A DNA stretch of 64,000 bases from Asterias rubens. Lineage: Eukaryota. The position numbers and the translations under genes are program-made. The notes under the pieces were generated by a model. It ran no database searches. It was not told the DNA's origin and worked only from the letters and a program-made list of their open reading frames with translations. The DNA lies in assembly GCF_902459465.1 (NCBI RefSeq), contig NC_047079.1, forward strand, positions 2,480,001 to 2,544,000, written 5' to 3'. Numbering within the stretch: position 1 is the stretch's first letter; each line of letters opens with the position of its first letter. Below, one piece after another: positions 17,101 to 36,285 of this stretch.

Positions 17101-17589
17101 TCTCAATCGAGAAATGATTATAGTTTCATATTACTGACGAATCCCAACCTATTATTATTGACCAACCTCAAACGCGCGTAACTGTCTGTCACACACGTGC
17201 ATGTAGGCCCGAGCGGAGGAGAACCTGAACAACCGATTCTTTGTCACACTTGGCATTAATTTTGGCTTTCAAATTGCACGTATACAGTCTACCAGGTTAC
17301 CATGACTGTTGGTAACTACCTAAACCAATCAAATCTGAAATGTCTTGGCTCGACAAAAGCTCAGTGATACTTGGTGCAGCTTTCTTGCGTTTTCTTCTTT
17401 CTTTCAAATGAATGCAGATTGTGCTTACCGTGTGATTTCAGGTTAATAGCGCTGCTGCTCAAGTGGGCAAAGTCGTGCATTGCAGGCGATAGCAATATTG
17501 AACACATCCGATTCACAATGCGCAAGCTGTGCTCTTAATTTTCCTTGCTCTATGGGAGAGGCTCGCACTTTAGCAAATTGCTTGTTGAA

Positions 17590-20500
17590 CTAAACAGGAA
17601 ACAAATTTAACAATTCAAGCAGCTCTTCGAAAGTGGGTGGTGGTATATAAAGAACGGAACCCCTAATAAGCATATTCAGGAACTCTGCATACGCCTTCAA
17701 GTCTTCATTCTGCAGACCACAATCATACAAACTCAAGAACTTCAACGAAGAAACAGGAGTTATCTGGTTTCCCTTAATACCACGTAGATTATTTCCATTG
17801 AGCCAAACCTTATGTATGCTCCCTGCAGCAGCTACTGTGGTAAGAAGTGGATTCATATCATCACTCTGTAGAGAACACTTCACTAGAAACAGTTGCATCA
17901 AGGAAGAAACAGGAGTTATCTGGTCCGCCTTAAAACCATGGAGATTGTTTTCAATTAGACCAAGTGTCGTTACACTACCTGCAGCAGCCACGATGGAGAA
18001 AACTGGTCCAATATCATCCCTTTGTATTCCACACGAGTGTAGATGCAATTCCTTCAAGGAAGAAACTAGAGTTATCTGGTCCCCTTTAATACCATGGATA
18101 TTGTTATCCTTTAGAGCAAGTGTCGTTACACTACCTGCAGCAGCCACGATGGAGAAAACTGGTTCAATATCATCACTTTGTAAACCACACGTGTATAGGT
18201 GCAATTCCTTCAAGGAAGAAACAGGAGTTATCTGGTCCGCCTTAATACCATGGATATTGTTATCCTTGAGAGCAAGTGTCGTAACATTACCTGCAGCAGC
18301 CACGATGGAGAAAACTGGTTCAATATCATCACTTTGTAAACCACACGAGTATAGATGCAATTCCTTCAAGGAAGAAACAGGAGTTATCTGGTCCGCCTTA
18401 ATACCATGGAGATTGTTTTTCATTAGAAAAAGTGTCATTACACCACCTGCAGCAGCCAAGATGGAGAAAACCGGTCCAATGTCATCGCTCTTGATACTAC
18501 ACGCACAGAGACGTAAATCCGTCAAGGAAGAAACAGGAGTTATCTGGTCCCCCTTAATACCATGGAGATCGTTATCCTCTAGAAGAAGTGTCGTTACACT
18601 ACCTGCAGCAGCCACGATGGTGAAAACCGTTTCAATATCATCACTTTGTAAACCACACGAGTGTAGATACAATTCCTTTAAGGAAGAAACAGAAGTTATC
18701 TGGTCCGCCTTAATACCATGGAGATTGTTATCCTTTAGAGCAAGTTTCGTTACACTACCTGCAGCAGCCACGATGGAGAAAACTGGTCCAATATCATCCC
18801 TTTGTATTCCACACGAGTATAGATGCAATTCCTTCAAGGAAGAAACTAGAGTTATCTGGTCCGCCTTAATACCATGGAGATCGTTATCCTTTACAACAAG
18901 TGTCGTTACCCTACCTGCAGCAGCCACGATGGAGAAAACTGAACCAATATCATCACTCTTGATACTACACGCACAGAGATGTAATTCCTTCAAGGAAGAA
19001 ACAGGAGTTATCTGGTCCGCCTTAATACCATGGAGATTGTTATCCATTACAAAAAGTGTCGTTACACTACCTGCAGCAGCCACGATGGAGAAAACTGAAC
19101 CAATGTCATCACTCTTGATACTACACGCACAGAGATGCAATTCCTTCAAGGAAGAAACAGGAGTTATCTGATCCCCTTTAATACCATGGATATTGTTATC
19201 CTTTAGAGCAAGTCTCGTTACACTACCTGCAGCAGCCACGATGGAGAAAACTGACCCTATATCATCACTCCGTATACCACACGAGTATAGATGCAATTCC
19301 TTCAAGGAAGAAACAGGAGTTATCTGGTCCGCCTTAATACCATGGAGATTGTTATCCATTACAAAAAGTGTCGTTACACTACCTGCAGCAGCCACGATGG
19401 AGAAAACTGAACCAATATCATCACTCTTGATACTACACGCACAGAGATGTAATTCCTTCAAGGAAGAAACAGGAGTTATCTGGTCCGCCTTAATACCATG
19501 GAGATTGTTATCCTTTACAACAAGTGTCGTTACACTACCTGCAGCAGCCACGATGGAGAAAACTGGTCCAATATCATCACTCTTGATACTACACGCACAG
19601 AGATATAATTCCGTCAAGGAAGAAACAGGAGTTATCTGGTCCGCCTTAATACCACGGAGATCGTTTTCGTTTAGAACAAGTCTCGTTACATTACCTGCAG
19701 CAGCCACGATGGAGAAAACTGGTCCAATATCATCCCTTTGTATTCCACACGAGTGTAGATGCAATTCCTTCAAGGAAGAAACTAGAGTTATCTGGTCCGC
19801 CTTAATACCACGGAGATCGTTTTCGTTTAGAACAAGTCTCGTTACATTACCTGCAGCAGCCACGATGGAGAAAACTGGTCCAATATCATCCCTTTGTATT
19901 CCACACGAGTATAGATGTAATTCCTTCAAGGAAGAAACAGGAGTTATCTGGTCCGCCTTAATACCATGGAGATTGTTATCCTTTACAACAAGTGTCGTTA
20001 CCCTACCTGCAGCAGCCACGATGGAGAAAACTGAACCAATGTCATCACTCTTGATACTACACGCACAGAGATGTAATTCCTTCAAGGAAGAAACAGGAGT
20101 TATCTGGTCCGCCTTAATACCATGGAGATTGTTATCCATTACAAAAAGTGTCGTTACACTACCTGCAGCAGCCACGATGGAGAAAACTGAACCAATATCA
20201 TCACTCTTGATACTACACGCACAGAGATGTAATTCCTTCAAGGAAGAAACAGGAGTTATCTGGTCCGCCTTAATACCATGGAGATTGTTATCCATTACAA
20301 AAAGTGTCGTTACACTACCTGCAGCAGCCACGATGGAGAAAACTGAACCAATATCATCACTCTTGATACTACACGCACAGAGATGTAATTCCTTCAAGGA
20401 AGAAACAGGAGTTATCTGGTCCGCCTTAATACCATGGATATTGTTATCCTTTAGAACAAGTCTCGTTACACTACCTGCAGCAGCCACGATGGAGAAAACT

Positions 20501-23500
20501 GAACCAATATCATCACCCTTGATACTACACGCACAGAGATGTAATTCCTTCAAGGAAGAAACAGGAGTTATCTGGTCCGCCTTAATACCATGGAGATTGT
20601 TATCCATTACAAAAAGTGTCGTTACACTACCTGCAGCAGCCACGATGGAGAAAACTGAACCAATATCATCACTCTTGATACTACACGCACAGAGATGTAA
20701 TTCCTTCAAGGAAGAAACAGGAGTTATCTGGTCCGCCTTAATACCATGGAGATTGTTATCCATTACAAAAAGTGTCGTTACACTACCTGCAGCAGCCACG
20801 ATGGAGAAAACTGAACCAATATCATCACTCTTGATACTACACGCACAGAGATGTAATTCCTTCAAGGAAGAAACAGGAGTTATCTGGTCCGCCTTAATAC
20901 CATGGAGATTGTTATCCTTTACAACAAGTGTCGTTACACTACCTGCAGCAGCCACGATGGAGAAAACTGGTCCAATGTCATCACTCTTGATACTACACGC
21001 ACAGAGATGTAATTCCGTCAAGGAAGAAACAGGAGTTATCTGGTCCGCCTTAATACCACGGAGATCGTTTTCGTTTAGAACAAGTCTCGTTACATTACCT
21101 GCAGCAGCCACGATGGAGAAAACTGGTCCAATATCATCCCTTTGTATTCCACACGAGTATAGATGCAATTCCTTCAAGGAAGAAACTAGAGTTATCTGGT
21201 CCGCCTTAACACCATGGATATTGTTTTCCTTTACAACAAGTGTCGTTACACTACCTGCAGCAGCCACGATGGAGAAAACTGAACCAATATCATCACTCTT
21301 GATACTACACGCACAGAGATGTAATTCCTTCAAGGAAGAAACAGGAGTTATCTGGTCCGCCTTAATACCATGGAGATTGTTATCCATTACAATAAGTGTC
21401 GTTACACTACCTGCAGCAGCCACGATGGAGAAAACTGAACCAATATCATCACTCTTGATACTACACGCACAGAGATGTAATTCCTTCAAGGAAGAAACAG
21501 GAGTTATCTGGTCCGCCTTAATACCACGGAGATCGTTTTCGTTTAGAACAAGTCTCGTTACATTACCTGCAGCAGCCACGATGGAGAAAACTGGTCCAAT
21601 ATCATCACTCTTGATACTACACGCACAGAGATATAATTCCGTCAAGGAAGAAACAGGAGTTATCTGGTCCGCCTTAATACCACGGAGATCGTTTTCGTTT
21701 AGAACAAGTCTCGTTACATTACCTGCAGCAGCCACGATGGAGAAAACTGGTCCAATATCATCCCTTTGTATTCCACACGAGTATAGATGCAATTCCTTCA
21801 AGGAAGAAACAGGAGTTATCTGGTCCGCCTTAACACCATGGATATTGTTATCCATTACAAAAAGTGTCGTTACACTACCTGCAGCAGCCACGATGGAGAA
21901 AACTGAACCAATATCATCACTCTTGATACTACACGCACAGAGATGTAATTCCTTCAAGAAAGAAACAGGAGTTATCTGGTCCGCCTTAATACCATGGAGA
22001 TTGTTATCCTTTACAACAAGTGTCGTTACACTACCTGCAGCAGCCACGATGGAGAAAACTGGTCCAATATCATCACTCTTGATACTACACGCACAGAGAT
22101 ATAATTCCGTCAAGGAAGAAACAGGAGTTATCTGGTCCGCCTTAATACCACGGAGATCGTTTTCGTTTAGAACAAGTCTCGTTACATTACCTGCAGCAGC
22201 CACGATGGAGAAAACTGGTCCAATATCATCCCTTTGTATTCCACACGAGTGTAGATGCAATTCCTTCAAGGAAGAAACTAGAGTTATCTGGTCCGCCTTA
22301 ACACCATGGATATTGTTATCCATTACAAAAAGTGTCGTTACACTACCTGCAGCAGCCACGATGGAGAAAACTGAACCAATATCATCACTCTTGATACTAC
22401 ACGCACAGAGATGTAATTCCTTCAAGGAAGAAACAGGAGTTATCTGGTCCGCCTTAATACCACGGAGATCGTTTTCGTTTAGAACAAGTCTCGTTACATT
22501 ACCTGCAGCAGCCACGATGGAGAAAACTGGTCCAATATCATCACTCTTGATACTACACGCACAGAGATATAATTCCGTCAAGGAAGAAACAGGAGTTATC
22601 TGGTCCGCCTTAATACCACGGAGATCGTTTTCGTTTAGAACAAGTCTCGTTACATTACCTGCAGCAGCCACGATGGAGAAAACTGGTCCAATATCATCCC
22701 TTTGTATTCCACACGAGTATAGATGCAATTCCTTCAAGGAAGAAACTAGAGTTATCTGGTCCGCCTTAATACCATGGAGATCGTTATCCTTTACAACAAG
22801 TGTCGTTACCCTACCTGCAGCAGCCACGATGGAGAAAACTGAACCAATATCATCACTCTTGATACTACACGCACAGAGATGTAATTCCTTCAAGGAAGAA
22901 ACAGGAGTTATCTGGTCCGCCTTAATACCATGGAGATTGTTATCCATTACAAAAAGTGTCGTTACACTACCTGCAGCAGCCACGACGGAGAAAACTGGTC
23001 CAATATCATCACTTTGTATACCACACGAGTATAGATGCAATTCCTTCAAGGAAGAAACTGGAGTTATCTGGTCCGCCTTAATATCATGGAGATCGTTTTC
23101 GTTTAGAACAAGTCTCGTTACACTACCTGCAGCAGCCACGACGGAGAAAACTGGTCCAATATCATCACTCTGTATACCACACGAGTGTAGATGCAATTCC
23201 TTCAAGGAAGAAACAGGAGTTATCTGATCCCCTTTAATACCAGGGAGATCGTTATCATATAGAACAAGTTTCGTTACACTACCTGAAGCAGCCACGACAG
23301 AGAAAACTGGTTCAATATCATCACTTTGTAAACCACACGAGTATAGATGCAATTCCTTCAAGGAAGAAACAGGAGTTATCTGGTCCCCCTTAATACCATG
23401 GAGATCGTTATCCTCTAGAACAAGTTTCGTTACACTACTGGAAGCAGCCACGACGGAGAAAACTGGTCCAATATCATCACTTTGTAAACCACACGTGTTT

Positions 23501-23931
23501 AGGTGCAATTCCTTCAAGGAAGAAACAGGTGTTAACTGATCCCCTTTAATACCATGGAGATCGTTGTTCATTAGAACAAGTTTCGTTACACTTCCTGCAG
23601 CAGCCACAATGGAGAAAACTGACCCAATATCATCCTTTGTCAGCTTACATCCAATTAGTACCAACATCTTCAATGAAGAAATACAAGGTATTTGCTCTGA
23701 TTTTATACCGTGCAAATTGTTTCTACTCAAACCAACTGTCTGTAATTTGGTAGCTGATTGAAATAACCTGAAAAGTTCAGGGACAGAGAAACAGTCTAAC
23801 TGACAATCTCTTAACCTAAGTGATGTTACAAATGTAGAAATGTTTCTGAGTTCATGTATCTTGTTGTTCATGTTGATCCCAACTACTTCTAATGATAAAT
23901 CACACCTCATTCTAGCCATTATTTGTTCCAT
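17590..23931 (-). CDS. Giant leucine-rich-repeat ORF (2113 aa), C-terminal part of the NLR
   Basis: 34 aa + 39 x 52 aa + 51 aa = 2113. Each unit is a 28-aa Cys-type LRR (LKELHLxxCxI) plus a 24-aa Asn-type LRR (VTxLxLxxNxL). The frame stays open upstream to 24048. Confidence 0.92.
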   Translation of the reverse strand: MEQIMARMRCDLSLEVVGINMNNKIHELRNISTFVTSLRLRDCQLDCFSVPELFRLFQSATKLQTVGLSRNNLHGIKSEQIPCISSLKMLVLIGCKLTKDDIGSVFSIVAAAGSVTKLVLMNNDLHGIKGDQLTPVSSLKELHLNTCGLQSDDIGPVFSVVAASSSVTKLVLEDNDLHGIKGDQITPVSSLKELHLYSCGLQSDDIEPVFSVVAASGSVTKLVLYDNDLPGIKGDQITPVSSLKELHLHSCGIQSDDIGPVFSVVAAAGSVTRLVLNENDLHDIKADQITPVSSLKELHLYSCGIQSDDIGPVFSVVAAAGSVTTLFVMDNNLHGIKADQITPVSSLKELHLCACSIKSDDIGSVFSIVAAAGRVTTLVVKDNDLHGIKADQITLVSSLKELHLYSCGIQRDDIGPVFSIVAAAGNVTRLVLNENDLRGIKADQITPVSSLTELYLCACSIKSDDIGPVFSIVAAAGNVTRLVLNENDLRGIKADQITPVSSLKELHLCACSIKSDDIGSVFSIVAAAGSVTTLFVMDNNIHGVKADQITLVSSLKELHLHSCGIQRDDIGPVFSIVAAAGNVTRLVLNENDLRGIKADQITPVSSLTELYLCACSIKSDDIGPVFSIVAAAGSVTTLVVKDNNLHGIKADQITPVSFLKELHLCACSIKSDDIGSVFSIVAAAGSVTTLFVMDNNIHGVKADQITPVSSLKELHLYSCGIQRDDIGPVFSIVAAAGNVTRLVLNENDLRGIKADQITPVSSLTELYLCACSIKSDDIGPVFSIVAAAGNVTRLVLNENDLRGIKADQITPVSSLKELHLCACSIKSDDIGSVFSIVAAAGSVTTLIVMDNNLHGIKADQITPVSSLKELHLCACSIKSDDIGSVFSIVAAAGSVTTLVVKENNIHGVKADQITLVSSLKELHLYSCGIQRDDIGPVFSIVAAAGNVTRLVLNENDLRGIKADQITPVSSLTELHLCACSIKSDDIGPVFSIVAAAGSVTTLVVKDNNLHGIKADQITPVSSLKELHLCACSIKSDDIGSVFSIVAAAGSVTTLFVMDNNLHGIKADQITPVSSLKELHLCACSIKSDDIGSVFSIVAAAGSVTTLFVMDNNLHGIKADQITPVSSLKELHLCACSIKGDDIGSVFSIVAAAGSVTRLVLKDNNIHGIKADQITPVSSLKELHLCACSIKSDDIGSVFSIVAAAGSVTTLFVMDNNLHGIKADQITPVSSLKELHLCACSIKSDDIGSVFSIVAAAGSVTTLFVMDNNLHGIKADQITPVSSLKELHLCACSIKSDDIGSVFSIVAAAGRVTTLVVKDNNLHGIKADQITPVSSLKELHLYSCGIQRDDIGPVFSIVAAAGNVTRLVLNENDLRGIKADQITLVSSLKELHLHSCGIQRDDIGPVFSIVAAAGNVTRLVLNENDLRGIKADQITPVSSLTELYLCACSIKSDDIGPVFSIVAAAGSVTTLVVKDNNLHGIKADQITPVSSLKELHLCACSIKSDDIGSVFSIVAAAGSVTTLFVMDNNLHGIKADQITPVSSLKELHLYSCGIRSDDIGSVFSIVAAAGSVTRLALKDNNIHGIKGDQITPVSSLKELHLCACSIKSDDIGSVFSIVAAAGSVTTLFVMDNNLHGIKADQITPVSSLKELHLCACSIKSDDIGSVFSIVAAAGRVTTLVVKDNDLHGIKADQITLVSSLKELHLYSCGIQRDDIGPVFSIVAAAGSVTKLALKDNNLHGIKADQITSVSSLKELYLHSCGLQSDDIETVFTIVAAAGSVTTLLLEDNDLHGIKGDQITPVSSLTDLRLCACSIKSDDIGPVFSILAAAGGVMTLFLMKNNLHGIKADQITPVSSLKELHLYSCGLQSDDIEPVFSIVAAAGNVTTLALKDNNIHGIKADQITPVSSLKELHLYTCGLQSDDIEPVFSIVAAAGSVTTLALKDNNIHGIKGDQITLVSSLKELHLHSCGIQRDDIGPVFSIVAAAGSVTTLGLIENNLHGFKADQITPVSSLMQLFLVKCSLQSDDMNPLLTTVAAAGSIHKVWLNGNNLRGIKGNQITPVSSLKFLSLYDCGLQNEDLKAYAEFLNMLIRGSVLYIPPPTFEELLELLNLFPV
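17680..23830 (-). repeat. Coding tandem repeat, 156-bp unit, about 39 copies
   Basis: ttccttcaaggaagaaac recurs at 19141 and 19297 (156 bp apart) and throughout the array. Confidence 0.95.
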
Positions 23932-23989
23932 GAGGTCTAAATCGGTTTGTCCTTGACACGTAATCGTTAAATGTGAAACACAATGCGGA

Positions 23990-25657
23990 CTAGATCGTGT
24001 TGGTAGGTTTTGAATGAAATAAGTGTGCAGCCAAGAGGTCTTCTCCTTTCAGATCATATGGGAATCTTACCCACTCATCCATCGCGAGGGGTTTTACAGC
24101 CGAACCGAGCTTGGCTTCAAACAAAGACAACATTATTATCCTGTGTAAACAGATATACCTCTGAAGTCCAACAGGAGAGATGTTATTGGAAACTGAAAGG
24201 CGTTTTTTTATCAGGTGTATAACGAATTCTGCTGCTTTTTTGGTTCTCCCGCTGCAGAAACGGAGTAAGTATTCGATTCTTTCTACGTCGCCGTCTAACA
24301 ATTTTGACATGTGATCATTAAATTTGTCTGGATTTGACTCTGCCATACCAGAAAGGTACACGGAACAACAAAACTGCATGAATATCATGTGGTAGAAATG
24401 GACTTGTTCAACCTCTTCTATACCGTGCATGAATTGAACTCGGGTCAGCAAGCCAACTTCACATCCCAAACTGACAAGGTCTTCTGAATCAAACTCTGAA
24501 ACCGTGAAGGAATTTTGTGCATGGCTTTTTTTCATTAAACTCTCAAGTGCAACCTGCCCAAGTTTTGCAACCAGCTCATTAAACGCTTTTTCTGTAAGCT
24601 TCTCGGAGGGCTTGGATGTGCAGTATTTGCTCATCTTTTGCTTATGGATTATGTTGACTGCGTCACTGAGCAGTTCTGTAATCCTGTCTGGTAGTCGACT
24701 TCCGGCCTGTGTTAAAGACGAACACATCAGCCAAAGAAACAGAGGAATCTCCCCTAAACTGCGCAGTGTTTCCGACTTACTTATTTCAGAAAGTACATAA
24801 TCGTGATATTGGGGATCAAAGTTGCTGAAATAGTTGCGGATATATTCTTTCTTATTTTTTTCATCGAATCCAACTATATTTACTCTTGTGAAATCTGGGT
24901 TGCAAGTCAGTAACTTAAGGGCCGTAGACTGACGACTTGTTACAATTACCTTACAGCGTTTAAGCGACTTGAATGAGAGGACATTGTTAACACTGAAGTC
25001 TTCGTTTGCCATTTGTAGTCTCTCGAATGGGATTTCGTCTGCTCCATCAAGAAGGATGAGAACTTTCTCTGGGTTTTGTGTCATATAATTCTCAACACTC
25101 TTTTTCCCAAAATCATTGTGAGGCAATATTTGAGAATATATTTCATCTGTAATATTGAACTTTGCCTTCATTTGGTTTATTTCCAACAAAAAGACGAGCT
25201 CGTACTTTGACAGAGGCGACTCTCGTTTTTGTTGAGTCACGTGAGTATCCCTCTGTAAAACAGCCCAGTCATAAGCTATCTTCTTTAAAAGCGTTGATTT
25301 ACCATACCCACTTTCAGCAGTGATTAAGATTCTGTTCTTATCAAAGCTTAACATGTCTTCGTATGACTTGAGGGGAATTTTCTTATACTCTGTTCGGGTT
25401 TTATCGGTCTCGTTTTCGCCGTTTAATGTCAATGTGTACTGTGTGATCGGTTTCATGTTTTCCTTTAACTAAACTTGACTGCAATATGAGTGGCTTATCA
25501 GGTTGGTTTGTTTCTTGCAAAAGTTCTAAACTTACATAAAGTTGATCCATATCACGAGCTAGATGCTTAGCTGTAGGATGTGTGTTCACTTTCATTGTTT
25601 CCTTGTAATGACTCACCAAAGTCTCAACCAGCGCTTTGCAGTGCAGATCCATCTCAC
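23990..25657 (-). pseudogene. NLR NACHT/winged-helix/HD2 region, 5' part of the large terminal exon, with two +1 frameshifts
   Basis: Phase-1 acceptor gtacag|GT at 25657. Walker A ITAESGYGKST, Walker B LILLDGADE, sensor-1 VIVTSR, IPLFLWLMC and FYHMIFMQF. Frame changes fall in windows 25404-25468 and 23993-24048. Confidence 0.9.
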
Positions 25658-26624
25658 CTGTACGAAACATATTGAGCAATTCTGGGTTAAAACAAAGGAA
25701 CAATTTGAACCTAATTTGAACCTACATGTACATCCTCCGGCGCTCCACCAAGTCCTCAATCTAGCTCTTTAAGGAACACGTTGCCTTGGATCGGACGAGT
25801 TGGTCTATAAAAAGCGTTTGAAACCGTTTGTTATGAAATGCATATGGTTAGAAAGATGTTTTAAAAGTAGAATATAATTATCCAGACAAGTATCACTTAA
25901 AATTGCACGGTTTTCCTTTTACGTAGCGAACTAACACGGTCGGCCATTATGGGAGTCAAAAATTTGACTTCTACTTTTACAACATCTTTCTACCCATATG
26001 CATTTTATAACAAACGGTTACAGAACGCTTTCCAAAGACCAACTCGACCGATCCAAGGCACCGTGTTCCTTTAAACGCTTGCGGTCTCGCTACTTTGTTA
26101 GTATTTTTTTATGCAATTCACCAGACACACAAGGCCTGAAGGCCACTTCAAGGTGTGGGCTACAATTGTTGTTCTTCCAGGGGCCGTTGCCACCTACTCC
26201 GGGGGCTGAAACAGGGATACCCATTTATTTACAGTCATCAGAAGCAATAGGCCTACAGCCTGAACTGCCGCGAAGCCAATGATTTTACGAATCAACCCAT
26301 GAACCACCAGGAAAGGGATCACTTTATCGACCTGCAAGGTTTTACACGGCAGTTTACGAACGAGTCACTACCTTTTTATTAGGTGTTGGGGCCAACAGCC
26401 TGGAAAAACCTCTTATTTTTGTTCGTTTTGATGACTTCATCCAATCTTGAGTTATGAAAACTCTGGATCTACACAATGGATTCTTACAATCAATACATCA
26501 TCGGAAAGGTCATTACAAACTCTGTAAACGCCTCACAGACATGACCCCATTTTGACCTTGTCTTCCGGGTCAAAATCGAGGTTGAAATATTCCACCAGTG
26601 GCCGTGCGTAAAGATTTTACACGT

Positions 26625-28776
26625 GGGTCATTCCATGTCAGACCAACGCACTTTTTCACCTCATGTCTTCCGATTTTGATAAAAATCGCTGTGATTGTAG
26701 GTCCTTATGAGCAATGAATGCTCAGCAATTTTATGCCCGATCGGACTTACCATGTGGTCAGGGCAGAAACCAATAAAATCTGACATTTTTAGGATAAAAT
26801 ACCACCTATTTGGTAAAAATATGTCATAACCATGTCAAATCTCATCACATATATGCAAGTTGGTATCAAAATGATGAGAGTTGCATGCTCAAATCAGTTC
26901 TTTTGTCAAAAATAAATTTTCTGAAATGTAGGTCACTGTAATCTTTAATATGTTATCGTGACCTTTAACCCAGTTTTTGAAATAATGTTTCATTCCAAAA
27001 ATCAATGAAATAAAAATCTCTTGATAGAGCATGTCTTCCTTTATCAGAATCCACTAAGAAACAGTTGGGCTCTTAAAAGCTAAACAACTTTATGACTATT
27101 TTTGTACAAGTACCGTGATCTTTAATATGTTATCGTGACCTTTGACCCAATTTGTGAAACAATGCACCATTCAAAAAATCAACAAAAGAAAAATCACTTG
27201 ATAGAACATGTTTTTCTCTATCACAACCAACCAAGAAACAACTGGGCTCTTCAAAATTTACAATTTTATTACAATTTGTGTACAGTTGTTAGATCACAAA
27301 CTAGTCAATTTATATACTTAACATAATAAATCCACCAACAAACCTCACTCTTCTGTTTCTAAAATTACTTAAAGTGTTCACGATTTGCGATTTGTTTCTT
27401 GTTGAGGGTTGATGTGGTTTAACCAGAATCAGAATTCTGGGGTGGGCCATATTTTCCCCAAAAATTTCTTTCGAAGATTGTAAAACAAAAATCAAAACAA
27501 ATCAAACAAACAAATTGAATACCTTGGATCAATCCCCCAGACCCATCGTACCCCACCCCCTCCCCCTTTCGGGTGCACCACTGAGATTATTAGTGATCCC
27601 AGTTAGAGATTACATCAAGGTTGAGATGGAGAAGCTGTCTGCCTTCCTTCAGTAGATCACAAACTTATGCAGTCTTACTTTAACCCCCTGTGATGAATCT
27701 TGAACAACAAATTAATGCATAGTAACTTTCTGAGAAATCCTCAAGAACAATTTGTTCACCATGCTGCAACTCTGACTTCAGTGCCCATTTTAATAGAGCT
27801 GCTCAGCAGCAGATTTTGTGCTAACTGTGCGATTTCCATTTAACCGTACAGCACACGAAAAGGCATGCTAACTTTCCGATGAAGTCAGAGTTGCAGCATG
27901 GTGGCATTTGTTGTTTACCATCTTGGATAAAAATTTGGCTTCGAAAAAAAGCTTCCCCCCCCCCACCCACAACCCAAATTAAGTCTCGGGTGCGTCACTG
28001 CTGGTATTTTAAAGTATGATTCTGGTTAGACCACATCCGCCCTTAACATGAAAAATCCCAAACCAATAACAATTTTAGTAACTTTGGACAGTTTTTTATT
28101 TTTATTTATTTTAGTAAAGTACATGTATAAATTGATTAATTTGTAACCTACTAACTGTACAAAAATAGTCTTTAAGTTGTAAATTTTGAAGAGCCGAGTT
28201 GTTTCTTAGTGGATTCTGATAGAGGACGACATGCTCTATCAAGTGATTTTCATTTCATTGACTTTTGGAATGATGCGTTATTTCAAAAATTGGGTCAAAG
28301 GTCACGATAACATATTAAAGATCATAGTGACTTGTACAAAAATAGTCTTGTAAATTTTGTAGAACCCAACTGTTTCTTAGCGGATTCTGAAAGAGGAAGA
28401 CATGCCCTATCAAATGATTTTTATTTCGTCGATTTTTGGAATGATACATTATTTCAAAAAAGGGGTCAAAGGTCACGATAACATATTACAGAGTACAGTG
28501 ACCTAAATTTCAGAAAAAAATGTTTTTGAAGAAAGAATTGATTTTTACAAGCAATTCTCATCAATTTGATACCAAATTTGCATATGTGATAAACATTTAC
28601 ATGGTTATGACATATTTTTACCAAAGAAGGTGGTCTGCCCTGACCACATGGAAAGTCCGATCGGGCTAAAAATTGCTGTGCATTCATTGCTCATTAGGAC
28701 CTACAAGCACAGCAATTTTTATCAAAATTGGAAGACATGAGGTAAAAAAGTGGGTTGGTCTGACATGGAATGACCC
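26625..28776. mobile_element. Non-autonomous long-TIR DNA transposon (~650-700-bp inverted arms, GGG...CCC ends, ACGT on both flanks), Sola2-like
   Basis: gggtcattccatgtcagaccaac at 26625 mirrors gttggtctgacatggaatgaccc ending at 28776. Arms ~26625-27330 and ~28130-28776 are diverged inverted copies. The superfamily call is inference. Confidence 0.6.
27757..27903. mobile_element. Small MITE with perfect 24-bp TIRs nested in the long-TIR element
   Basis: caccatgctgcaactctgacttca / tgaagtcagagttgcagcatggtg. Confidence 0.7.
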
Positions 28777-30185
28777 ACGTACAACACGTGTTGAGTCACG
28801 CTTCAGTGCTCATCCATAGAGCGCAATGCTTCTTCGTTCAAGGCGTTTTTAACATACAGTTCCCTTACGATTACTACTAGTCTGTACTGTACAGTCGTCA
28901 ATATTTCATAAGTTCATATTTCCCAAACCACAGAAGCTATTTTGACAATCTATACATCATATTGAAGGGCTCTACGTACTTTACAAAAACGGATATGTTG
29001 GTGACCTTCTCGTGACCTTTTGACCTGTCTAAACCAGCAGTACCTGTAATATACTTTGAAAAGACGTCATGTAATGGCTTTTGGGTTGATACATACACCT
29101 TTTCATGCTTTACCATTACAGAATACAACTCTGGCAAAGGTCTGGTTTAAACAAATAATACCGATTATGTCACCAAATGTAAGAGCGCCCTCTAGCGGCA
29201 GATTAAAAACATCTCAACATATACTTCTACTATGTCTGTGGTAGAGTTTTTGATAATTGTTTCAAAATTGGCACATAATCTCCCTCACAATAGCAACTTA
29301 TATGTGGAGTCTTAGCTTGATGACGTCATCATTGCTTTAAAGGTGCACTTTTGCAAAGCTGAGTGTATGCCAAACCAAAAGTTCGACTGAGGTGAAACTT
29401 GTTGTATTGTTAGTCAAGGACATTAACTTCTTGAACCCGAAAAGACGTCATGATGACGTCATCGTGTTGTTTCGACATGTTTTGTTAGTTACAAATCTTG
29501 AGACGAAGCAAGTTGCAATATTTGTTTTTTACACCAGGCTTTTTACTCCCGGAAACCGAACACCTAGAGTTTGTTCACAAACTCTCAATGTCTAGTTCCT
29601 ATTCATAAATGTCTTTTTGGTTAAAATGCGTAATAAACGAAGAAACTCTGTGAAACTTATCCGTTTACCACGTGCTTGAGCTCTGTACGTCCGTGTGTTG
29701 CATTGTTATGACTTGAGGCGACAGTTTTCGGATCCAATAGGAGACTTTCTGGGATGATAGAGGGCAGCAGACTTACCGGGTAAATCCATTGTTCTCAGAA
29801 TTATGCGCATGTTCAGAACTACGTAAACAATGGAAATTTACCCGGTATGTCTGCTGCCACCTAGCGTTGGAAAGTCTCCTATTGTGCACGTAGTCTTGGT
29901 GCAGGACGATTCTCGTTTTCCTTTCACACACAGCGCGAGCAACTCACCGACAGCGCCCGCATCGCCCTTCAACGAGAAACGTCTTGCACCAAGATTAGCG
30001 CGTAGTATGCATCTCAACGTATCCAAAAACAACCGGTTATAAACAGCTCCAACTGGTCTTTATCAACCGTTCAAACACTCCAACATGAAGCGCTCTCCAC
30101 CAATAAAGGAATAGCGAAACTGTCTGAGGTATTTTTGAATATATAAGTAAAATGGAAACTTTCTGGTTTTTAAAATAAAGCATAC

Positions 30186-30512
30186 CTAATTCTCTGACAA
30201 TGTCAGTACGACCAATTTCTTTAAGTGCCTTCTTCAGCCCGTCCTCAGCCGTCTCTTGGTTTGGTTGCCTTCTAAACCAACCCAGTAGCATCTGGAAGAT
30301 TTGTTCGTTGAGGTCATTTTGGTAATCGCTTTGATATGCGTAAATCTGTTCAGTTTCAAAACCTAAAAAAGTGCCGAGTTTCTTCCAATCTTTTCCAATC
30401 TTTCCGGCTACGACTCGTAACATCTTTTCATCAACACCTGATACTTTTGTTATTGACTGATGTTCTGATGACTGCCTGTTGTGAACTTTGTCTAGGGATG
30501 TGCGTGCATAAC
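30186..30512 (-). CDS. NLR exon: death domain 2 (phase 1-1, 327 nt)
   Basis: VDEKMLRVVAGKIGKDWKKLGTFLGFETEQIYAYQSDYQNDLNEQIFQMLLGWFRRQ...LKKALKEIGRTDIV fits the death-domain pattern. Flanked by ttatag| and |gtatg. Confidence 0.85.
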
Positions 30513-30832
30513 CTATAAGGAGAAAAGCAACCGAAAATTGCGTTGTATTCATTGTATTAATAAAATAATATATCTGGATATATTTCTATAAAGTTTTGCT
30601 GACATAATTTGTTTTGAAGCAAAGGTGAACATGTCGCTAACAACTTTGCTAGTAAAGTTGAGCCAATACTTCTCTCTTAATACTTATGCATGACGTCATA
30701 ATTCTTACCCAAAATGAGGCTATGGGCGCACTTCCCCCATCACTTGCAGTGGCTGCGCCCATCGCCTCGTTTTGAGTTAGCTTTGCGACGTACCTCATGC
30801 ATAAATATTAAGAGAGGCGTATGGGAACCAAC

Positions 30833-31041
30833 GATATCCTTTGGCGTCATTTGGATGGTAAATTGAGTATGTGTCAGTCTGTGCAGCTTTAATGCCTAAA
30901 GAAGTGCCAAGTTGCTTCCAATCTTTTCAATATTCCAATCTACGACTCCTAACATCTCATTAATACCTGATGTATCGGATGTTGACTGATGTTCCAGTGA
31001 CTGCCTCTTGCTACCTGCTCTTGGGGATGTGGGTACATAAC
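30833..31041 (-). pseudogene. Degenerate duplicate death-domain exon, truncated by a palindromic MITE (~30657-30832)
   Basis: TAG|GTTATG acceptor matches the 30512 exon. Reads GYVPTSPRAGSKRQSLEHQSTSDTSGINEMLGVV.., then after a frameshift KDWKQLGTSLGIK. Confidence 0.75.
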
Positions 31042-31845
31042 CTATATAAGAAGAATTACAACCACACAAAGGGTTTTATCTTAAAATCGTGTTAAAGGGT
31101 CTATGTACTTTTTCCTAACACAAAACACAATGCCCACAGATTTACTATAAACTTACACAGTTTGAAGATTACGATAGTAGAAAGCTACCCTTGAAATTTT
31201 ACTTACTGAGGTGCTGTAGTTTTTGAGAAATGAGTAAAACAAATAGTTGTCGTCTCACTTTTGGCATGTAAAAACGTATTAACCAGTTATGCTATGATTA
31301 TGGTGTATAACCATACTAGTTAATGGAATTTTACATGCTAAAATAATGTTCGACTCATGTTAGAGGCAAATTAGTTTGTGACTTGTTTTACTCATTTCTC
31401 AAAAAATATAGAACCTCAGTTAGTAATATTTGAAGGAAAGCTTTCCACTATCATTGTCTTCAAACCCTGTAAGTTTAATGTAAACCTGTGGACATTTTGA
31501 AAAAGAACCCAAATCTTTTAATAAAATAATTTGCCTGATGCAACTGATCTGGTTCCAACATATTGCTGAAATAATTCATGTTACCTTTCGAAAGGTTTAC
31601 CTGTAAAGGTAAGTGCCAAATCAGTCTTGTCTAGCATTATAAGTCAACTGTCGTTTTCAATACCCAAAACGACCAACCTGTGAGGTCATCAATTATTTAT
31701 ACATTTACAGGCAACTGAATGAATGACAGAATAATTTTGTCAAACATTATTCGGCTCAAGTTGACATTGACAAATCAAAAGAAACTGTGATAAAAAAAGC
31801 AATTTGTATGCAAGTGTCATTATAAACCCAAATAATTCAACCAAC

Positions 31846-32159
31846 CTGGGATCCTTGCAGATAAATCCCGCCGACTTATTTGAACCAATGCACTTCTCAA
31901 CCATTCCCTCGCTTGTTCCTTACTATCAGATTGCTTGCTCCACCAAGAAACTAGCATCTGATGAGCCTGTTCTTCTGGGTTGCTCTCAGCGAGACGTTCA
32001 AACTTGCCAATCTCTGCTTGTGTGAACTTAAGCTTGATTGCGAGTTGCTTCCAGTCCTTGCAGAGGTTTGCCGCTAAAGTCCGTAGGAATGTCTCGTCAA
32101 CTGTACTTCCAACAAAACGTTTTTAAAGCTGACTTTATTTTGCCGGGAATTGGCTCCAT
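31846..32159 (-). pseudogene. NLR exon: death domain 1 (first coding exon), with a +1 frameshift near 32120-32124
   Basis: Hand translation, absent from the ORF track: MEPIPGKIKSALK/RFVGSTVDETFLRTLAANLCKDWKQLAIKLKFTQAEIGKFERLAESNPEEQAHQMLVSWWSKQSDSKEQAREWLRSALVQISRRDLSARIP. Acceptor at 32180-32179 and phase-1 donor at 31845. Confidence 0.8.
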
Positions 32160-32963: not shown

Positions 32964-33080
32964 CGTGTCGGGGCGCCACCAAGCAAACCTTCTGCTAGTG
33001 TTAGATCAATGTTTGTCTCCGGTTTAATGCCAAGATCAACAAGAGTCAAAGCGTCACACAACTGGGAAAATAATTGACAG
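32964..33080 (-). other. Possible non-coding 5' exon of the NLR gene
   Basis: Strong donor cac|GTGAGT near 32963 lies upstream of the acceptor at 32179 that precedes the ATG at 32159. The upstream boundary is a guess. Confidence 0.3.
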
Positions 33081-34630: not shown

Positions 34631-36285
34631 CAATGGAATATAAATCATTGTCAGACAAAAATTGTGTTGCATAAAAACAATCGTCTTATCAGTACCCTTT
34701 AGAAAATGATGACTAGGGTATTGGGCATCGTAAATAAATCCCACGTCAGTGTGATTTTCTGCCTCGGCGTTAAACTCTTTGGAAACTCCATAGTAGGTAG
34801 GCTAAAGCCTCCCTTGACATTCTGTTTAAGTTTATGTACAAAGTATACGGTACCTTTTTGCTTGTGCTCCGCATTGTTCTTTGCCCAATGATGAATCTGA
34901 CGTGATCGTCTTGGTGTCTTGATGCTGTCCCGATGGCTTTGTCCTCTCTGCTAATGCAGATTTGAAAGCCGCCTGTCTACTCTTCTTGATTTTGTTCTTC
35001 CTCTCTACTGGTTTTGCCCTTGAATGATCATAGACGACCCTTAACCTCTTCCGGTCTTCATACCACTGTTTTAGAGATGGCTGAGACATGTTGGTGACGC
35101 TTTGGGGTGTAATCATTGAAGAAAAATCATTGGTTAATATTTTAAGTTTGGAACTAAGTAAATGCATCATTAATTTGCATGAACTTACCTGCATTAAATC
35201 TGAAGCCCGGGGCACTTTACGTGTTGATTTCTTGTGGTTTCGACAATTTACATGCTATACTGTAAACATATTACTACCACACACGTGGACACATGCAGAC
35301 GACCGAAAGTAAGCTTTCTATGTCTGTGTTTTGATTGGTCGTCCGGGGTGACCAATCAAAACAAACACAGCTAAGGTTGCTTTTAGTCAATGCATTTATC
35401 CAATGGTATCGTTGTATCCAATGGAATCACTGGATCTAAATAGCAGGTACCTGTCTTTATCCTTGCGGATAAAGCAAGGACCCAGTCTAGCACTATCGTT
35501 TGCGAGCTTGCTAGGACTAGACTGTGTTGTTAAATGGGAATATTTAATACCATTAACAACACATACAAAGTACCGGTAAGTAGTTTTGGGGCCAACAAAA
35601 ATGCACAGCACACAGAACCCCAATACACACATTCAATGGGAGTTGCTGACCCCCTGGTGACAACAACGTTTAGTTACAAACGTAAGAGGCGCGTTTCCAC
35701 CTGTTTTGTGTAGATTTGGGTGTCATCCATCAAACGGCCTTTAATATACAACATTAGACTTCAAGCCAGGCTTCTTTTGTTTATATGAAATGACAGGCTA
35801 ATACTGGAAACAACAGAAGCCATACCATGATATCAACATTTCCATTGGCATGTAAAGAGACAAACTGCTTGTGTTTATCTGTTTCCATAGTGACACTTTA
35901 CCTGGCTGATGACGACGCTTTACTATGAAACCATTATTATGTTTGTTCCCATCTCAAGTTTGGATTGACAGACTTTAGGGTCACAGGGTTTAAGTACTCT
36001 TTTGTTAATCCTGGCCAGCTTGAAATGGATTGTCTCTGTCCCTAGTTCCCTGCTCCTCTCCCAATTTCCACCCTGTTTTCCTGTCCTATCCCAATCTACC
36101 CTACCCTTTTTCACATTTTTCTTGTTGTATCCAAACCTTATGTCAGTCATCATCATTTAGGACCAGTGTTTTAGTTGCCATTATTTAGCATGTATGCCTT
36201 TATGTAGTTCTGTTCAACATATGTTTTTGTTTTGCTTTTCCTATTACTATCTTATTTGCAATTACATGTATTGTTATTTTTCTTT

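What the first reader, a model, noticed from the sequence alone, without database searches (positions are those of the whole stretch)
17590..23931. Intron-less array of about 79 LRRs: an exceptionally long NLR sensor built from one 156-bp two-LRR module
Seen: 39 contiguous 52-aa units plus a terminal half-unit, with no stop or indel over 6.3 kb, all in one exon with the NACHT. Units strictly alternate a 28-aa Cys-type and a 24-aa Asn-type LRR. Known: ribonuclease-inhibitor-type LRRs alternate Cys/Asn repeats of 28/29 aa, typical NLRs have roughly 10-30 LRRs, and vertebrate NLR LRRs are usually split over many small exons. Inference: the 28/24 pairing would give a multi-turn solenoid whose length can change by unequal crossover, making it a copy-number-variable immune receptor.
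Basis: partly seen in the sequence, partly recalled or inferred. Interest (0 to 1): 0.8.

Follow-up and report, generated by a model that had tools for sequence, protein, structure and literature searches.

The report
Giant 79-repeat starfish NLR gene
A starfish (Asterias rubens) gene for an intracellular immune-type sensor ends in about 79 leucine-rich repeats built from 39 near-identical double units. It is the longest member found here of a starfish gene family whose repeat arrays grow, shrink and vary on their predicted binding face.

Summary
The repeat array is real. There are 39 in-register 52-residue units plus a half unit, about 79 LRRs, on the minus strand at 23838-17590, with no indel. 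Each unit pairs a 28-residue Cys-type LRR with a 24-residue Asn-type LRR. The array is the 3' part of an 8.07-kb last exon of a gene with ubiquitin-like, Death, NACHT and LRR parts (35089-17590).

In the window the NACHT part is out of frame with the LRRs. However, contigs of four other public runs all lack one base at each of the two frame breaks in that exon. These breaks are therefore assembly errors or private variants. One spliced RNA contig enters the exon.

The array is not unique. Annotated but undescribed Asterias paralogs carry 11-34 such units, and Acanthaster and other relatives carry 4-5. This is the longest seen here.

Units resemble each other more than units of other genes. Variation concentrates on concave-face positions (pN/pS 1.38 against 0.45). 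Orthologs differ by exact 52-residue indels. This matches the published "high internal conservation" NLR pattern, here with LRRs in an animal.

Unit number by spanning reads, length polymorphism and multi-turn geometry remain untested. The scan had already noted this same stretch twice (s1-178733, s1-178777).

The parts
17590..25658 (-). Last exon, 8.07 kb: pre-NACHT linker, NACHT, helical region, whole LRR array, C-terminal tail and stop (TAG 17592-17590). It has 2688 codons once the two single-base excesses are left out.
   Evidence: tblastn of P0018/P0024 runs 25658 to 17590 in three frames. The acceptor AG is at 25659-25658. RNA-type runs X1 and X13 have zero depth at 25660-25734, and X1 contig record 8 continues 1132 nt elsewhere.
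17755..23838 (-). 39 in-register 156-bp (52-aa) two-LRR units. The first unit (23838-23683) is degenerate, and the last full unit (17910-17755) is divergent.
17593..17754 (-). Terminal half unit (one 28-aa-type LRR) and a short C-terminal tail.
   Evidence: row 38; partial HMM hit and 34-residue tail; tails of similar length in paralogs
23993..25468 (-). NACHT NTPase and following helical region (Walker A GYGKST, Walker B LLDGADE). In the window its frame differs from that of the LRRs.
   Evidence: Pfam NACHT E 1.9e-19; translation; 79% identity to A. amurensis P0017/P0018
24017..24023 (-). Frame break 1: one base too many in the window (CACTTATTTC).
   Evidence: Homologs read ...AAHYF... through it. 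Most or all of the contig depth in X1, X6, X9 and X13 leaves out 1 base at 24020 or 24023.
25419..25432 (-). Frame break 2: one base too many in the window.
   Evidence: P0018 reads HIDIKGEHETDKT across it. All contig depth in X1, X6, X9 and X13 leaves out 1 base at 25419 or 25421.
30142..30531 (-). Death-domain exon.
   Evidence: Pfam Death E 1.6e-13; tblastn
30840..31042 (-). Death-domain exon piece with frame break 3 at 30927-30928. By comparison with paralogs, one base appears to be missing from a Gly codon. Not tested with reads.
31841..32104 (-). Death-domain exon.
   Evidence: Pfam Death E 3.7e-10
32966..33064 (-). Second half of the ubiquitin-like domain.
   Evidence: tblastn 82-94% identity to P0018/P0009
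33965..34168 (-). First half of the ubiquitin-like domain.
   Evidence: Pfam ubiquitin E 3.6e-4; tblastn
34853..35089 (-). First coding exon (79 aa, no known domain).
   Evidence: tblastn 89-95% identity to residues 1-79 of P0018, P0024 and P0009

Best explanation
This is a transcribed Asterias rubens NLR gene with the architecture ubiquitin-like, Death domains, NACHT, LRR. Its sensor domain is a tandem array of 39.5 copies of a 52-residue two-LRR module, about 79 LRRs. The 28-residue repeat is a strand plus a helix, and the 24-residue repeat is a strand plus a loop. Together they stack into one continuous solenoid. By analogy with other NLRs (inferred), the LRR solenoid holds the NACHT ATPase inactive and binds a ligand. 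Binding would allow NACHT oligomerisation, and the Death domains would recruit downstream partners. The array behaves like the 'high internal conservation' (HIC) repeats of fungal NLRs. Unequal crossover and gene conversion between misaligned units keep the units alike within the gene and change their number in whole units. Amino-acid differences accumulate at the solvent-exposed positions of the beta-strands on the concave face. Shown here: the anatomy, the family, the transcription of the exon's ends, the whole-unit indels between orthologs and the position-specific variation. Inferred: ligand binding, immune role, solenoid geometry beyond local fold, and present-day length polymorphism.
For: Array anatomy. 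Domains: NACHT, LRR, Death and ubiquitin. Gene model with seven coding exons. Reads: all four runs lack the extra base at both frame breaks of the last exon. X1 contigs match at 97.7-100%, against about 84% for the nearest paralog DNA. One 1502-nt X1 contig ends at the acceptor and continues into other sequence, which indicates splicing. The 3' end 17250-17760 is held by small, probably RNA, runs at shares of 0.47-0.69. Family unit matches (unit-HMM hits, most counts including a terminal partial hit): 40 here; 34, 32, 20, 13 and 11 in A. amurensis; 22 and 19 in A. rubens paralogs; 5 in Acanthaster; 4 in other relatives. Concerted evolution: 34 of 38 units have their nearest neighbour in the same array. 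Mosaic structure: exact internal repeats are at most 417 bp, at lags of 3, 4, 6, 9, 16 and 25 units. Selection pattern: pN/pS is 1.38 at 12 concave x positions against 0.45 elsewhere, and there are 0 indels. Orthologs: the NACHT region is 94% identical but the LRR arrays only 80-81%, with three exact 52-residue indels. Fold: pLDDT 92.3 and pTM 0.87 for 12 units; pLDDT 90.0 and pTM 0.63 for 23 units, with an unbroken strand-helix/strand-loop pattern. The HIC concept and its link to length polymorphism come from PMC13449251.
Against: No read spans the array, so the unit number rests on one long-read assembly. The same assembly shows a 2.37-kb, 98.4%-identical tandem duplication and a 1.35-kb insert inside the paralog's array, so these loci may be hard to assemble. 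A third frame break at 30927-30928 in a Death exon was not tested. The run kinds are guesses ('?'), short-read contigs break inside the array, and transcription of the array's interior is not shown. The among-unit pN/pS is not a formal test, because units are not independent lineages. No functional or protein-level evidence exists.
Confidence: 0.75

Rival explanations
1. Pseudogene: a decaying NLR copy whose array expanded without constraint, like a 156-bp satellite that merely stays open because its unit has no stop.
For: There are three frame breaks in the assembled sequence. Openness is only marginally unexpected (P about 0.04), and an antisense frame is nearly open too. The window gene has a long NACHT branch and no 1:1 ortholog was retrieved.
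Against: Two of the three breaks are absent from all four other data sets. There are 0 indels in 5.7 kb at 90% identity. The scaffold positions show pN/pS 0.45. A spliced RNA contig and the 3' end are present in small, RNA-like runs.
Confidence: 0.1
2. Assembly over-expansion or mis-order: the true array is shorter or arranged differently, and the 39.5 units are partly an artefact of assembling near-identical repeats.
For: There is no spanning-read check. The assembly carries at least two single-base errors in this very exon. It also shows an odd duplication in the paralog locus.
Against: The longest exact internal repeat is 417 bp, and the longest stretch at or above 98.7% identity is 619 bp. 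Any read of a few kb is therefore placed uniquely. There are 28 distinct DNA units among 38. An independent assembly of A. amurensis has arrays of 32 and 34 units in the nearest relatives.
Confidence: 0.12
3. A real protein with a non-immune role, for example a structural or scaffolding LRR protein. On this view the repeat variation would be neutral drift plus conversion.
For: No expression or challenge data were examined. [quoted passage not shown]
Against: The Death-NACHT-LRR architecture is the standard invertebrate NLR design. Variation is focused on concave-face positions. LRR divergence between orthologs is about three times that of the NACHT region, 19-20% against 6%.
Confidence: 0.05

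Closest known systems
Asterias ubiquitin-Death-NACHT-LRR paralogs (A. amurensis 2842- and 2865-aa 'uncharacterized proteins' P0017 and P0018; A. rubens LOC117302773 and LOC117289125)
   Same: They share the domain order, the 52-residue 28+24 module and the C-terminal tail. The NACHT region is 70-79% identical.
   Different: The window's array is longer: 40 HMM hits against 34, 32, 22 and 19. No unit sequence is shared exactly. The window gene is a separate branch without a retrieved 1:1 ortholog. None of these proteins is described in the papers searched.
Fungal NLRs with high internal conservation (HIC) repeats, e.g. Podospora HNWD/het-e family (PMC13449251)
   Same: Both have a NACHT plus a C-terminal array of near-identical repeats. 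Both show concerted evolution within the gene, hypervariable positions on the binding surface and gain or loss of whole repeats.
   Different: The repeats are LRRs rather than WD40, ANK or TPR. The organism is an animal and the effector is Death domains. The array is far longer. Length polymorphism within the species is not yet shown.
Human NLRC5
   Same: It is a NACHT-LRR protein noted for an unusually long LRR domain, and database names for starfish relatives are 'NLRC5-like'.
   Different: NLRC5 has 27-38 divergent LRRs in 1866 aa (PMC11755879). From general knowledge, not tested here, its LRRs are split over many exons. Here there are about 79 near-identical LRRs in one exon, and the N-terminal domains differ.
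Ribonuclease inhibitor (RI-like LRR class)
   Same: Both alternate two repeat types. The 28-residue repeat has a strand and a convex-side helix. RI is the top Foldseek match by E-value and gives VIA Z 22.4.
   Different: RI alternates 28 and 29 residues, both with helices. Here the second repeat has 24 residues and no helix. Superposition is poor (rmsd 8.6 A over 399 residues, TM 0.25-0.36), so the curvature differs.
Other long internally conserved LRR arrays
   Same: These are Patiria miniata NLRC5-like XP_038052801 (about 24 double units), an unnamed ENA protein P0054 (at least 28 units of 57 aa) and Protochlamydia LGR proteins (5-18 concatenated 28-mers, PMC2216083). All grew by tandem concatenation of near-identical LRR modules.
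   Different: Their unit lengths and sequences differ. The bacterial proteins lack a NACHT domain. All have fewer repeats than the window's array.

Membership tests
Metazoan NLR (NACHT-LRR STAND ATPase) | NACHT NTPase domain with Walker A and Walker B motifs | tested here: met
   Pfam NACHT E 1.9e-19, 70.6 bits against a cut-off of 26.7. GYGKST and LLDGADE are visible in the translation.
Metazoan NLR (NACHT-LRR STAND ATPase) | C-terminal leucine-rich repeat domain on the same polypeptide | tested here: met
   LRR_8 E 1.3e-33. There is no intron, and homologs read through. An X1 contig of 784 nt crosses the NACHT-LRR junction and lacks the extra base. As assembled, the window itself is out of frame.
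Metazoan NLR (NACHT-LRR STAND ATPase) | N-terminal death-fold effector domain | tested here: met
   Death-domain exons score E 3.7e-10 and 1.6e-13. Full-length relatives have three Death domains.
Metazoan NLR (NACHT-LRR STAND ATPase) | Ligand-triggered oligomerisation and immune signalling | not testable with these tools
   No functional data are available.
RI-like LRR class | Alternating 28- and 29-residue repeats, each a strand plus a helix | tested here: not met
   The repeats are 28 and 24 residues. DSSP on the models shows a helix only in the 28-residue repeat.
RI-like LRR class | RI horseshoe curvature | tested here: not met
   rmsd 8.3-8.7 A over about 400 residues (VIA). Foldseek TM is 0.23-0.42.
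HIC (high internal conservation) NLRs | Repeats at least about 70% similar to their consensus | tested here: met
   Mean column identity is 85% over 38 units. Mean pairwise nucleotide identity is 0.88. T-REKS Psim itself was not computed.
HIC (high internal conservation) NLRs | Concerted evolution within the gene | tested here: met
   34 of 38 units have their nearest neighbour in the same array.
HIC (high internal conservation) NLRs | A few hypervariable positions on the binding surface | tested here: met
   Entropy peaks at unit positions 5, 8, 10, 11, 13, 15, 16 and 31, 34, 36, 38, 39, 41, 43. pN/pS is 1.38 at the concave x positions against 0.45 elsewhere. This is an informal test.
HIC (high internal conservation) NLRs | Repeat-number polymorphism among alleles of one species | not tested
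   Only between-species and between-paralog differences were seen: three 52-residue indels, and 11, 32 and 34 unit matches in close paralogs. Spanning reads were not available.

The most novel reading that the evidence does not exclude
Forcipulate starfish may run an LRR-based counterpart of the fungal HIC-NLR system. On this reading, giant single-exon arrays of up to about 79 LRRs are length-polymorphic between individuals, reshuffle a small alphabet of unit variants on the concave face, and fold into a superhelix of roughly three turns. Such a superhelix would offer many binding sites in series, for example for polymeric or repetitive microbial ligands.
Probability: 0.3. Interest if true: 0.7.

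Novelty: new member of a known kind. Interest (0 to 1): 0.45.

Why it matters
Animal NLRs are usually described with one to three dozen divergent LRRs, and diversity is thought to come from gene number. This family shows a second route in an animal without adaptive immunity. A single exon carries dozens of near-identical LRR modules that change in number and vary at the predicted contact positions, as already shown for fungal NLR repeats. It gives a concrete locus with defined unit variants where length polymorphism, selection and ligand binding can be tested. It may also be the longest uninterrupted LRR solenoid so far tied to a NACHT domain. In addition, it is a practical warning. The public assembly has single-base errors that hide this gene from annotation, and related loci look hard to assemble.

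Tried and rejected
1. A short intron between NACHT and LRR (a GTAAG at about 24069 looked like a donor) was rejected. Homologs are collinear through the region, and other runs simply lack one base.
2. Using the 6.3-kb open frame as proof of coding was rejected as weak (P about 0.04, and the antisense frame is nearly open).
3. Filing the repeats as RI-type was rejected (28/24 instead of 28/29, one helix per unit, poor superposition).
4. Measuring the superhelix pitch failed. The structure tool returns no coordinates, and PDB matches (TLR3 Z 22.9 at about 10 A rmsd) say nothing firm about curvature.
5. Checking unit number with reads was not possible.
6. Literature searches for a description of starfish NLRs with long LRR arrays found none.
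7. Looking for a 1:1 A. amurensis ortholog retrieved none.
8. Using the RefSeq paralog as an independent check that NACHT and array share one exon was inconclusive. That locus is interrupted by a duplication and an insert.
Full report
**Observation**

On the minus strand, Tandem Repeats Finder reports one array at 17898-23634 with period 156, 36.8 copies, 90% matches and no indels. The frame is open for 2152 codons from 24048 to 17593. The listed ORF 23931-17590 (2113 aa) merely starts at the first ATG.

Printing the translation on a VSxL anchor gives 38 anchors, all exactly 52 residues apart. A profile built from the units finds 39 near-full copies and one partial copy, with no off-register spacing. 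This equals 39 units plus a terminal half unit, about 79 LRRs.

Each unit holds an LxxLxLxxCxI repeat of 28 residues and an LxxLxLxxNxL repeat of 24 residues. Thirteen columns are invariant, and mean column identity is 85%.

The long open frame is weaker evidence than it looks. Only 126 distinct variant states exist and 2.6% of single changes to the consensus would make a stop. The chance of seeing no stop is therefore about 0.04. One antisense frame has just 3 stops, which explains the long plus-strand ORFs.

The NACHT ORF (25468-23993; Pfam NACHT E 1.9e-19) is in a different frame and ends in TAG at 23992-23990. Relatives read straight through this point, so there is no intron. The window has one base too many near 24020.

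A second frame change of the same kind lies near 25420. A third lies at 30927-30928 in a Death-domain exon. There, by comparison with paralogs, a base seems to be missing from a Gly codon.

I laid contigs of four public runs on 23560-25800. Most or all of the contig depth in every run leaves out one base at 24020/24023, and all of it leaves out one base at 25419/25421. The X1 contigs are 97.7-100% identical to the window, whereas the nearest paralog's DNA is about 84% identical. They therefore come from this locus.

One 1502-nt X1 contig matches 25289-25659 with two mismatches and continues for 1132 nt into other sequence. Depth in X1 and X13 is zero just upstream of the AG at 25659-25658. This is a spliced message entering the last exon.

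The 3' end (17250-17760) is also held by small runs that are probably RNA. The two breaks in the last exon are thus assembly errors or private variants. The exon 25658-17590 encodes 2688 residues in one piece, covering NACHT, the helical region and all LRRs. The third break is untested.

**Gene and organism**

tblastn with full-length relatives places seven coding exons from 35089 to 17590. They comprise an N-terminal exon, a ubiquitin-like domain in two exons, Death-domain exons and the large last exon. Pfam confirms ubiquitin, Death (three in the relatives) and NACHT.

The window's own protein sits on a 12,862,124-bp contig. The paralog LOC117302773 sits on a contig of the same length, which is chromosome LR699109.1 of the Asterias rubens assembly GCA_902459465.3.

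**The family**

A search with the LRR frame finds Asterias proteins of 1715-2865 residues with the same architecture. All are named 'uncharacterized protein'.

Unit matches from the profile (most counts include a terminal partial hit) are as follows:

| Source | Unit matches |
|---|---|
| This window | 40 |
| A. amurensis proteins | 34, 32, 20, 13, 11 |
| A. rubens paralogs | 22, 19 |
| Acanthaster protein | 5 |
| More distant relatives with complete C-termini | 4 |

A scan of 1.84 billion representative proteins with the unit profile gives only 84 hits at E <= 0.001. Nearly all strong hits are starfish proteins or unnamed fragments. They include a Patiria 'NLRC5-like' protein with about 24 double units, and an unnamed protein with at least 28 near-identical 57-residue units.

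The array is therefore the longest member found here of an existing but undescribed family. It is not a singular object.

**How the array evolves**

- Among the 38 full units there are 28 distinct DNA versions and 27 distinct protein versions.
- Thirty-four of the 38 units have their closest relative inside the same array, and no unit is shared exactly with another gene.
- Exact internal repeats are short (at most 417 bp) and occur at lags of 3, 4, 6, 9, 16 and 25 units. Stretches at or above 98.7% identity reach at most 619 bp. This is a mosaic expected from repeated unequal exchange and conversion, not from a few block duplications.
- In a NACHT tree the window is sister, with moderate support, to three A. 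amurensis paralogs that carry 34, 32 and 11 unit matches.
- In two A. rubens/A. amurensis ortholog pairs the NACHT region is 94% identical while the collinear LRR arrays are only 80-81% identical. One pair differs by three indels of exactly 52 residues.
- Variation among units peaks at positions 5, 8, 10, 11, 13, 15, 16 of the 28-residue repeat and 31, 34, 36, 38, 39, 41, 43 of the 24-residue repeat.
- At the twelve x positions of the two LxxLxLxxN/C strands pN/pS is 1.38, against 0.45 for the other forty codons.

**Structure**

AlphaFold2 on 12 units gives pLDDT 92.3 and pTM 0.87. On 23 units it gives pLDDT 90.0 and pTM 0.63. Both show an unbroken pattern of strand-helix (28 residues) and strand-loop (24 residues) and no low-confidence segment.

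Fold searches return only generic LRR solenoids:

| Match | Z | rmsd | Residues aligned |
|---|---|---|---|
| TLR3 | 22.9 | about 10 A | 578 |
| Ribonuclease inhibitor | 22.4 | 8.6 A | 399 |
| NLRP3 LRR | 22.1 | 5.4 A | 320 |

The fold is thus confirmed, but the curvature matches no solved structure over its length. The multi-turn shape remains an inference. For comparison, the 25 LRRs of BRI1 make one superhelical turn (PMC4030839).

**Comparison with what is known**

The behaviour matches 'high internal conservation' NLR repeats, defined in fungi. These are near-identical repeats with a few hypervariable surface positions, concerted evolution and repeat-number polymorphism. A 2026 survey states that such NLRs also occur in animals, plants and bacteria (PMC13449251).

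[quoted passage not shown] The papers searched describe no starfish NLR with long LRR arrays.

I therefore file this as a new, extreme member of a known kind. It is an animal HIC-type NLR with LRRs, with the family already present but unnamed in public annotation.

**Caveats**

- No read spans the array.
- The same assembly has single-base errors in this exon.
- In the paralog locus, the assembly shows a 98.4%-identical 2.37-kb tandem duplication of the NACHT end plus the first units, and a 1.35-kb insert within the array.
- Against over-expansion of the window's array stand the short internal identities and the independent 32- and 34-unit arrays in A. amurensis.
- Length polymorphism within the species, transcription of the array's interior and any immune function are untested.

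**Earlier notes**

Earlier scan notes on this same stretch reported the unit alphabet with variation on the binding strand (s1-178733). My analysis agrees with that.

They also reported three single-base repairs (s1-178777). I confirm two of these as excess bases that are absent from reads. I read the third as a missing base rather than an excess one.

Noticed in passing
L001:9408-14145 and L001:14866-16215 (A. rubens LOC117302773, same chromosome): The paralog's locus has a tandem 2.37-kb duplication (98.4% identity) of the NACHT C-terminal part plus the first six LRR units. It also has a unique 1.35-kb insert inside the array. The RefSeq model must splice around both. This is either a real rearrangement or a misassembly.
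   Followed up: partly
window 26621-28780: A foldback-like structure lies in the 4.5-kb intron before the last exon. Its inverted arms are 80-93% complementary (26621-27330 against 28110-28780), each with internal 171-177-bp direct repeats. It is probably a transposable element.
   Followed up: no
window 25735-25800: Summed contig depth jumps to 4.7e4-1.8e6 in all four runs just upstream of the last exon, with many unlike loose ends at 25766-25768. This is the edge of a very high-copy repeat.
   Followed up: no
window 17798-19171 and 19193-23227 (+ strand): The long antisense ORFs (457 and 1344 aa) over the array are by-products of a repeat unit whose antisense frame lacks stops. They are not genes.
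   Followed up: yes
window 30840-31042: This Death-domain exon piece has a frame break at 30927-30928 and diverges from paralogs after ...HPNDAK. It may be a decayed or skipped exon, and its use in the mRNA is unknown.
   Followed up: partly
protein P0054 (ENA, 110,914-bp contig, organism unknown): This 1859-residue protein has at least 28 near-identical 57-residue double LRR units and is cut off within the array. It shows another lineage with very long internally conserved LRR arrays.
   Followed up: no
   Followed up: no
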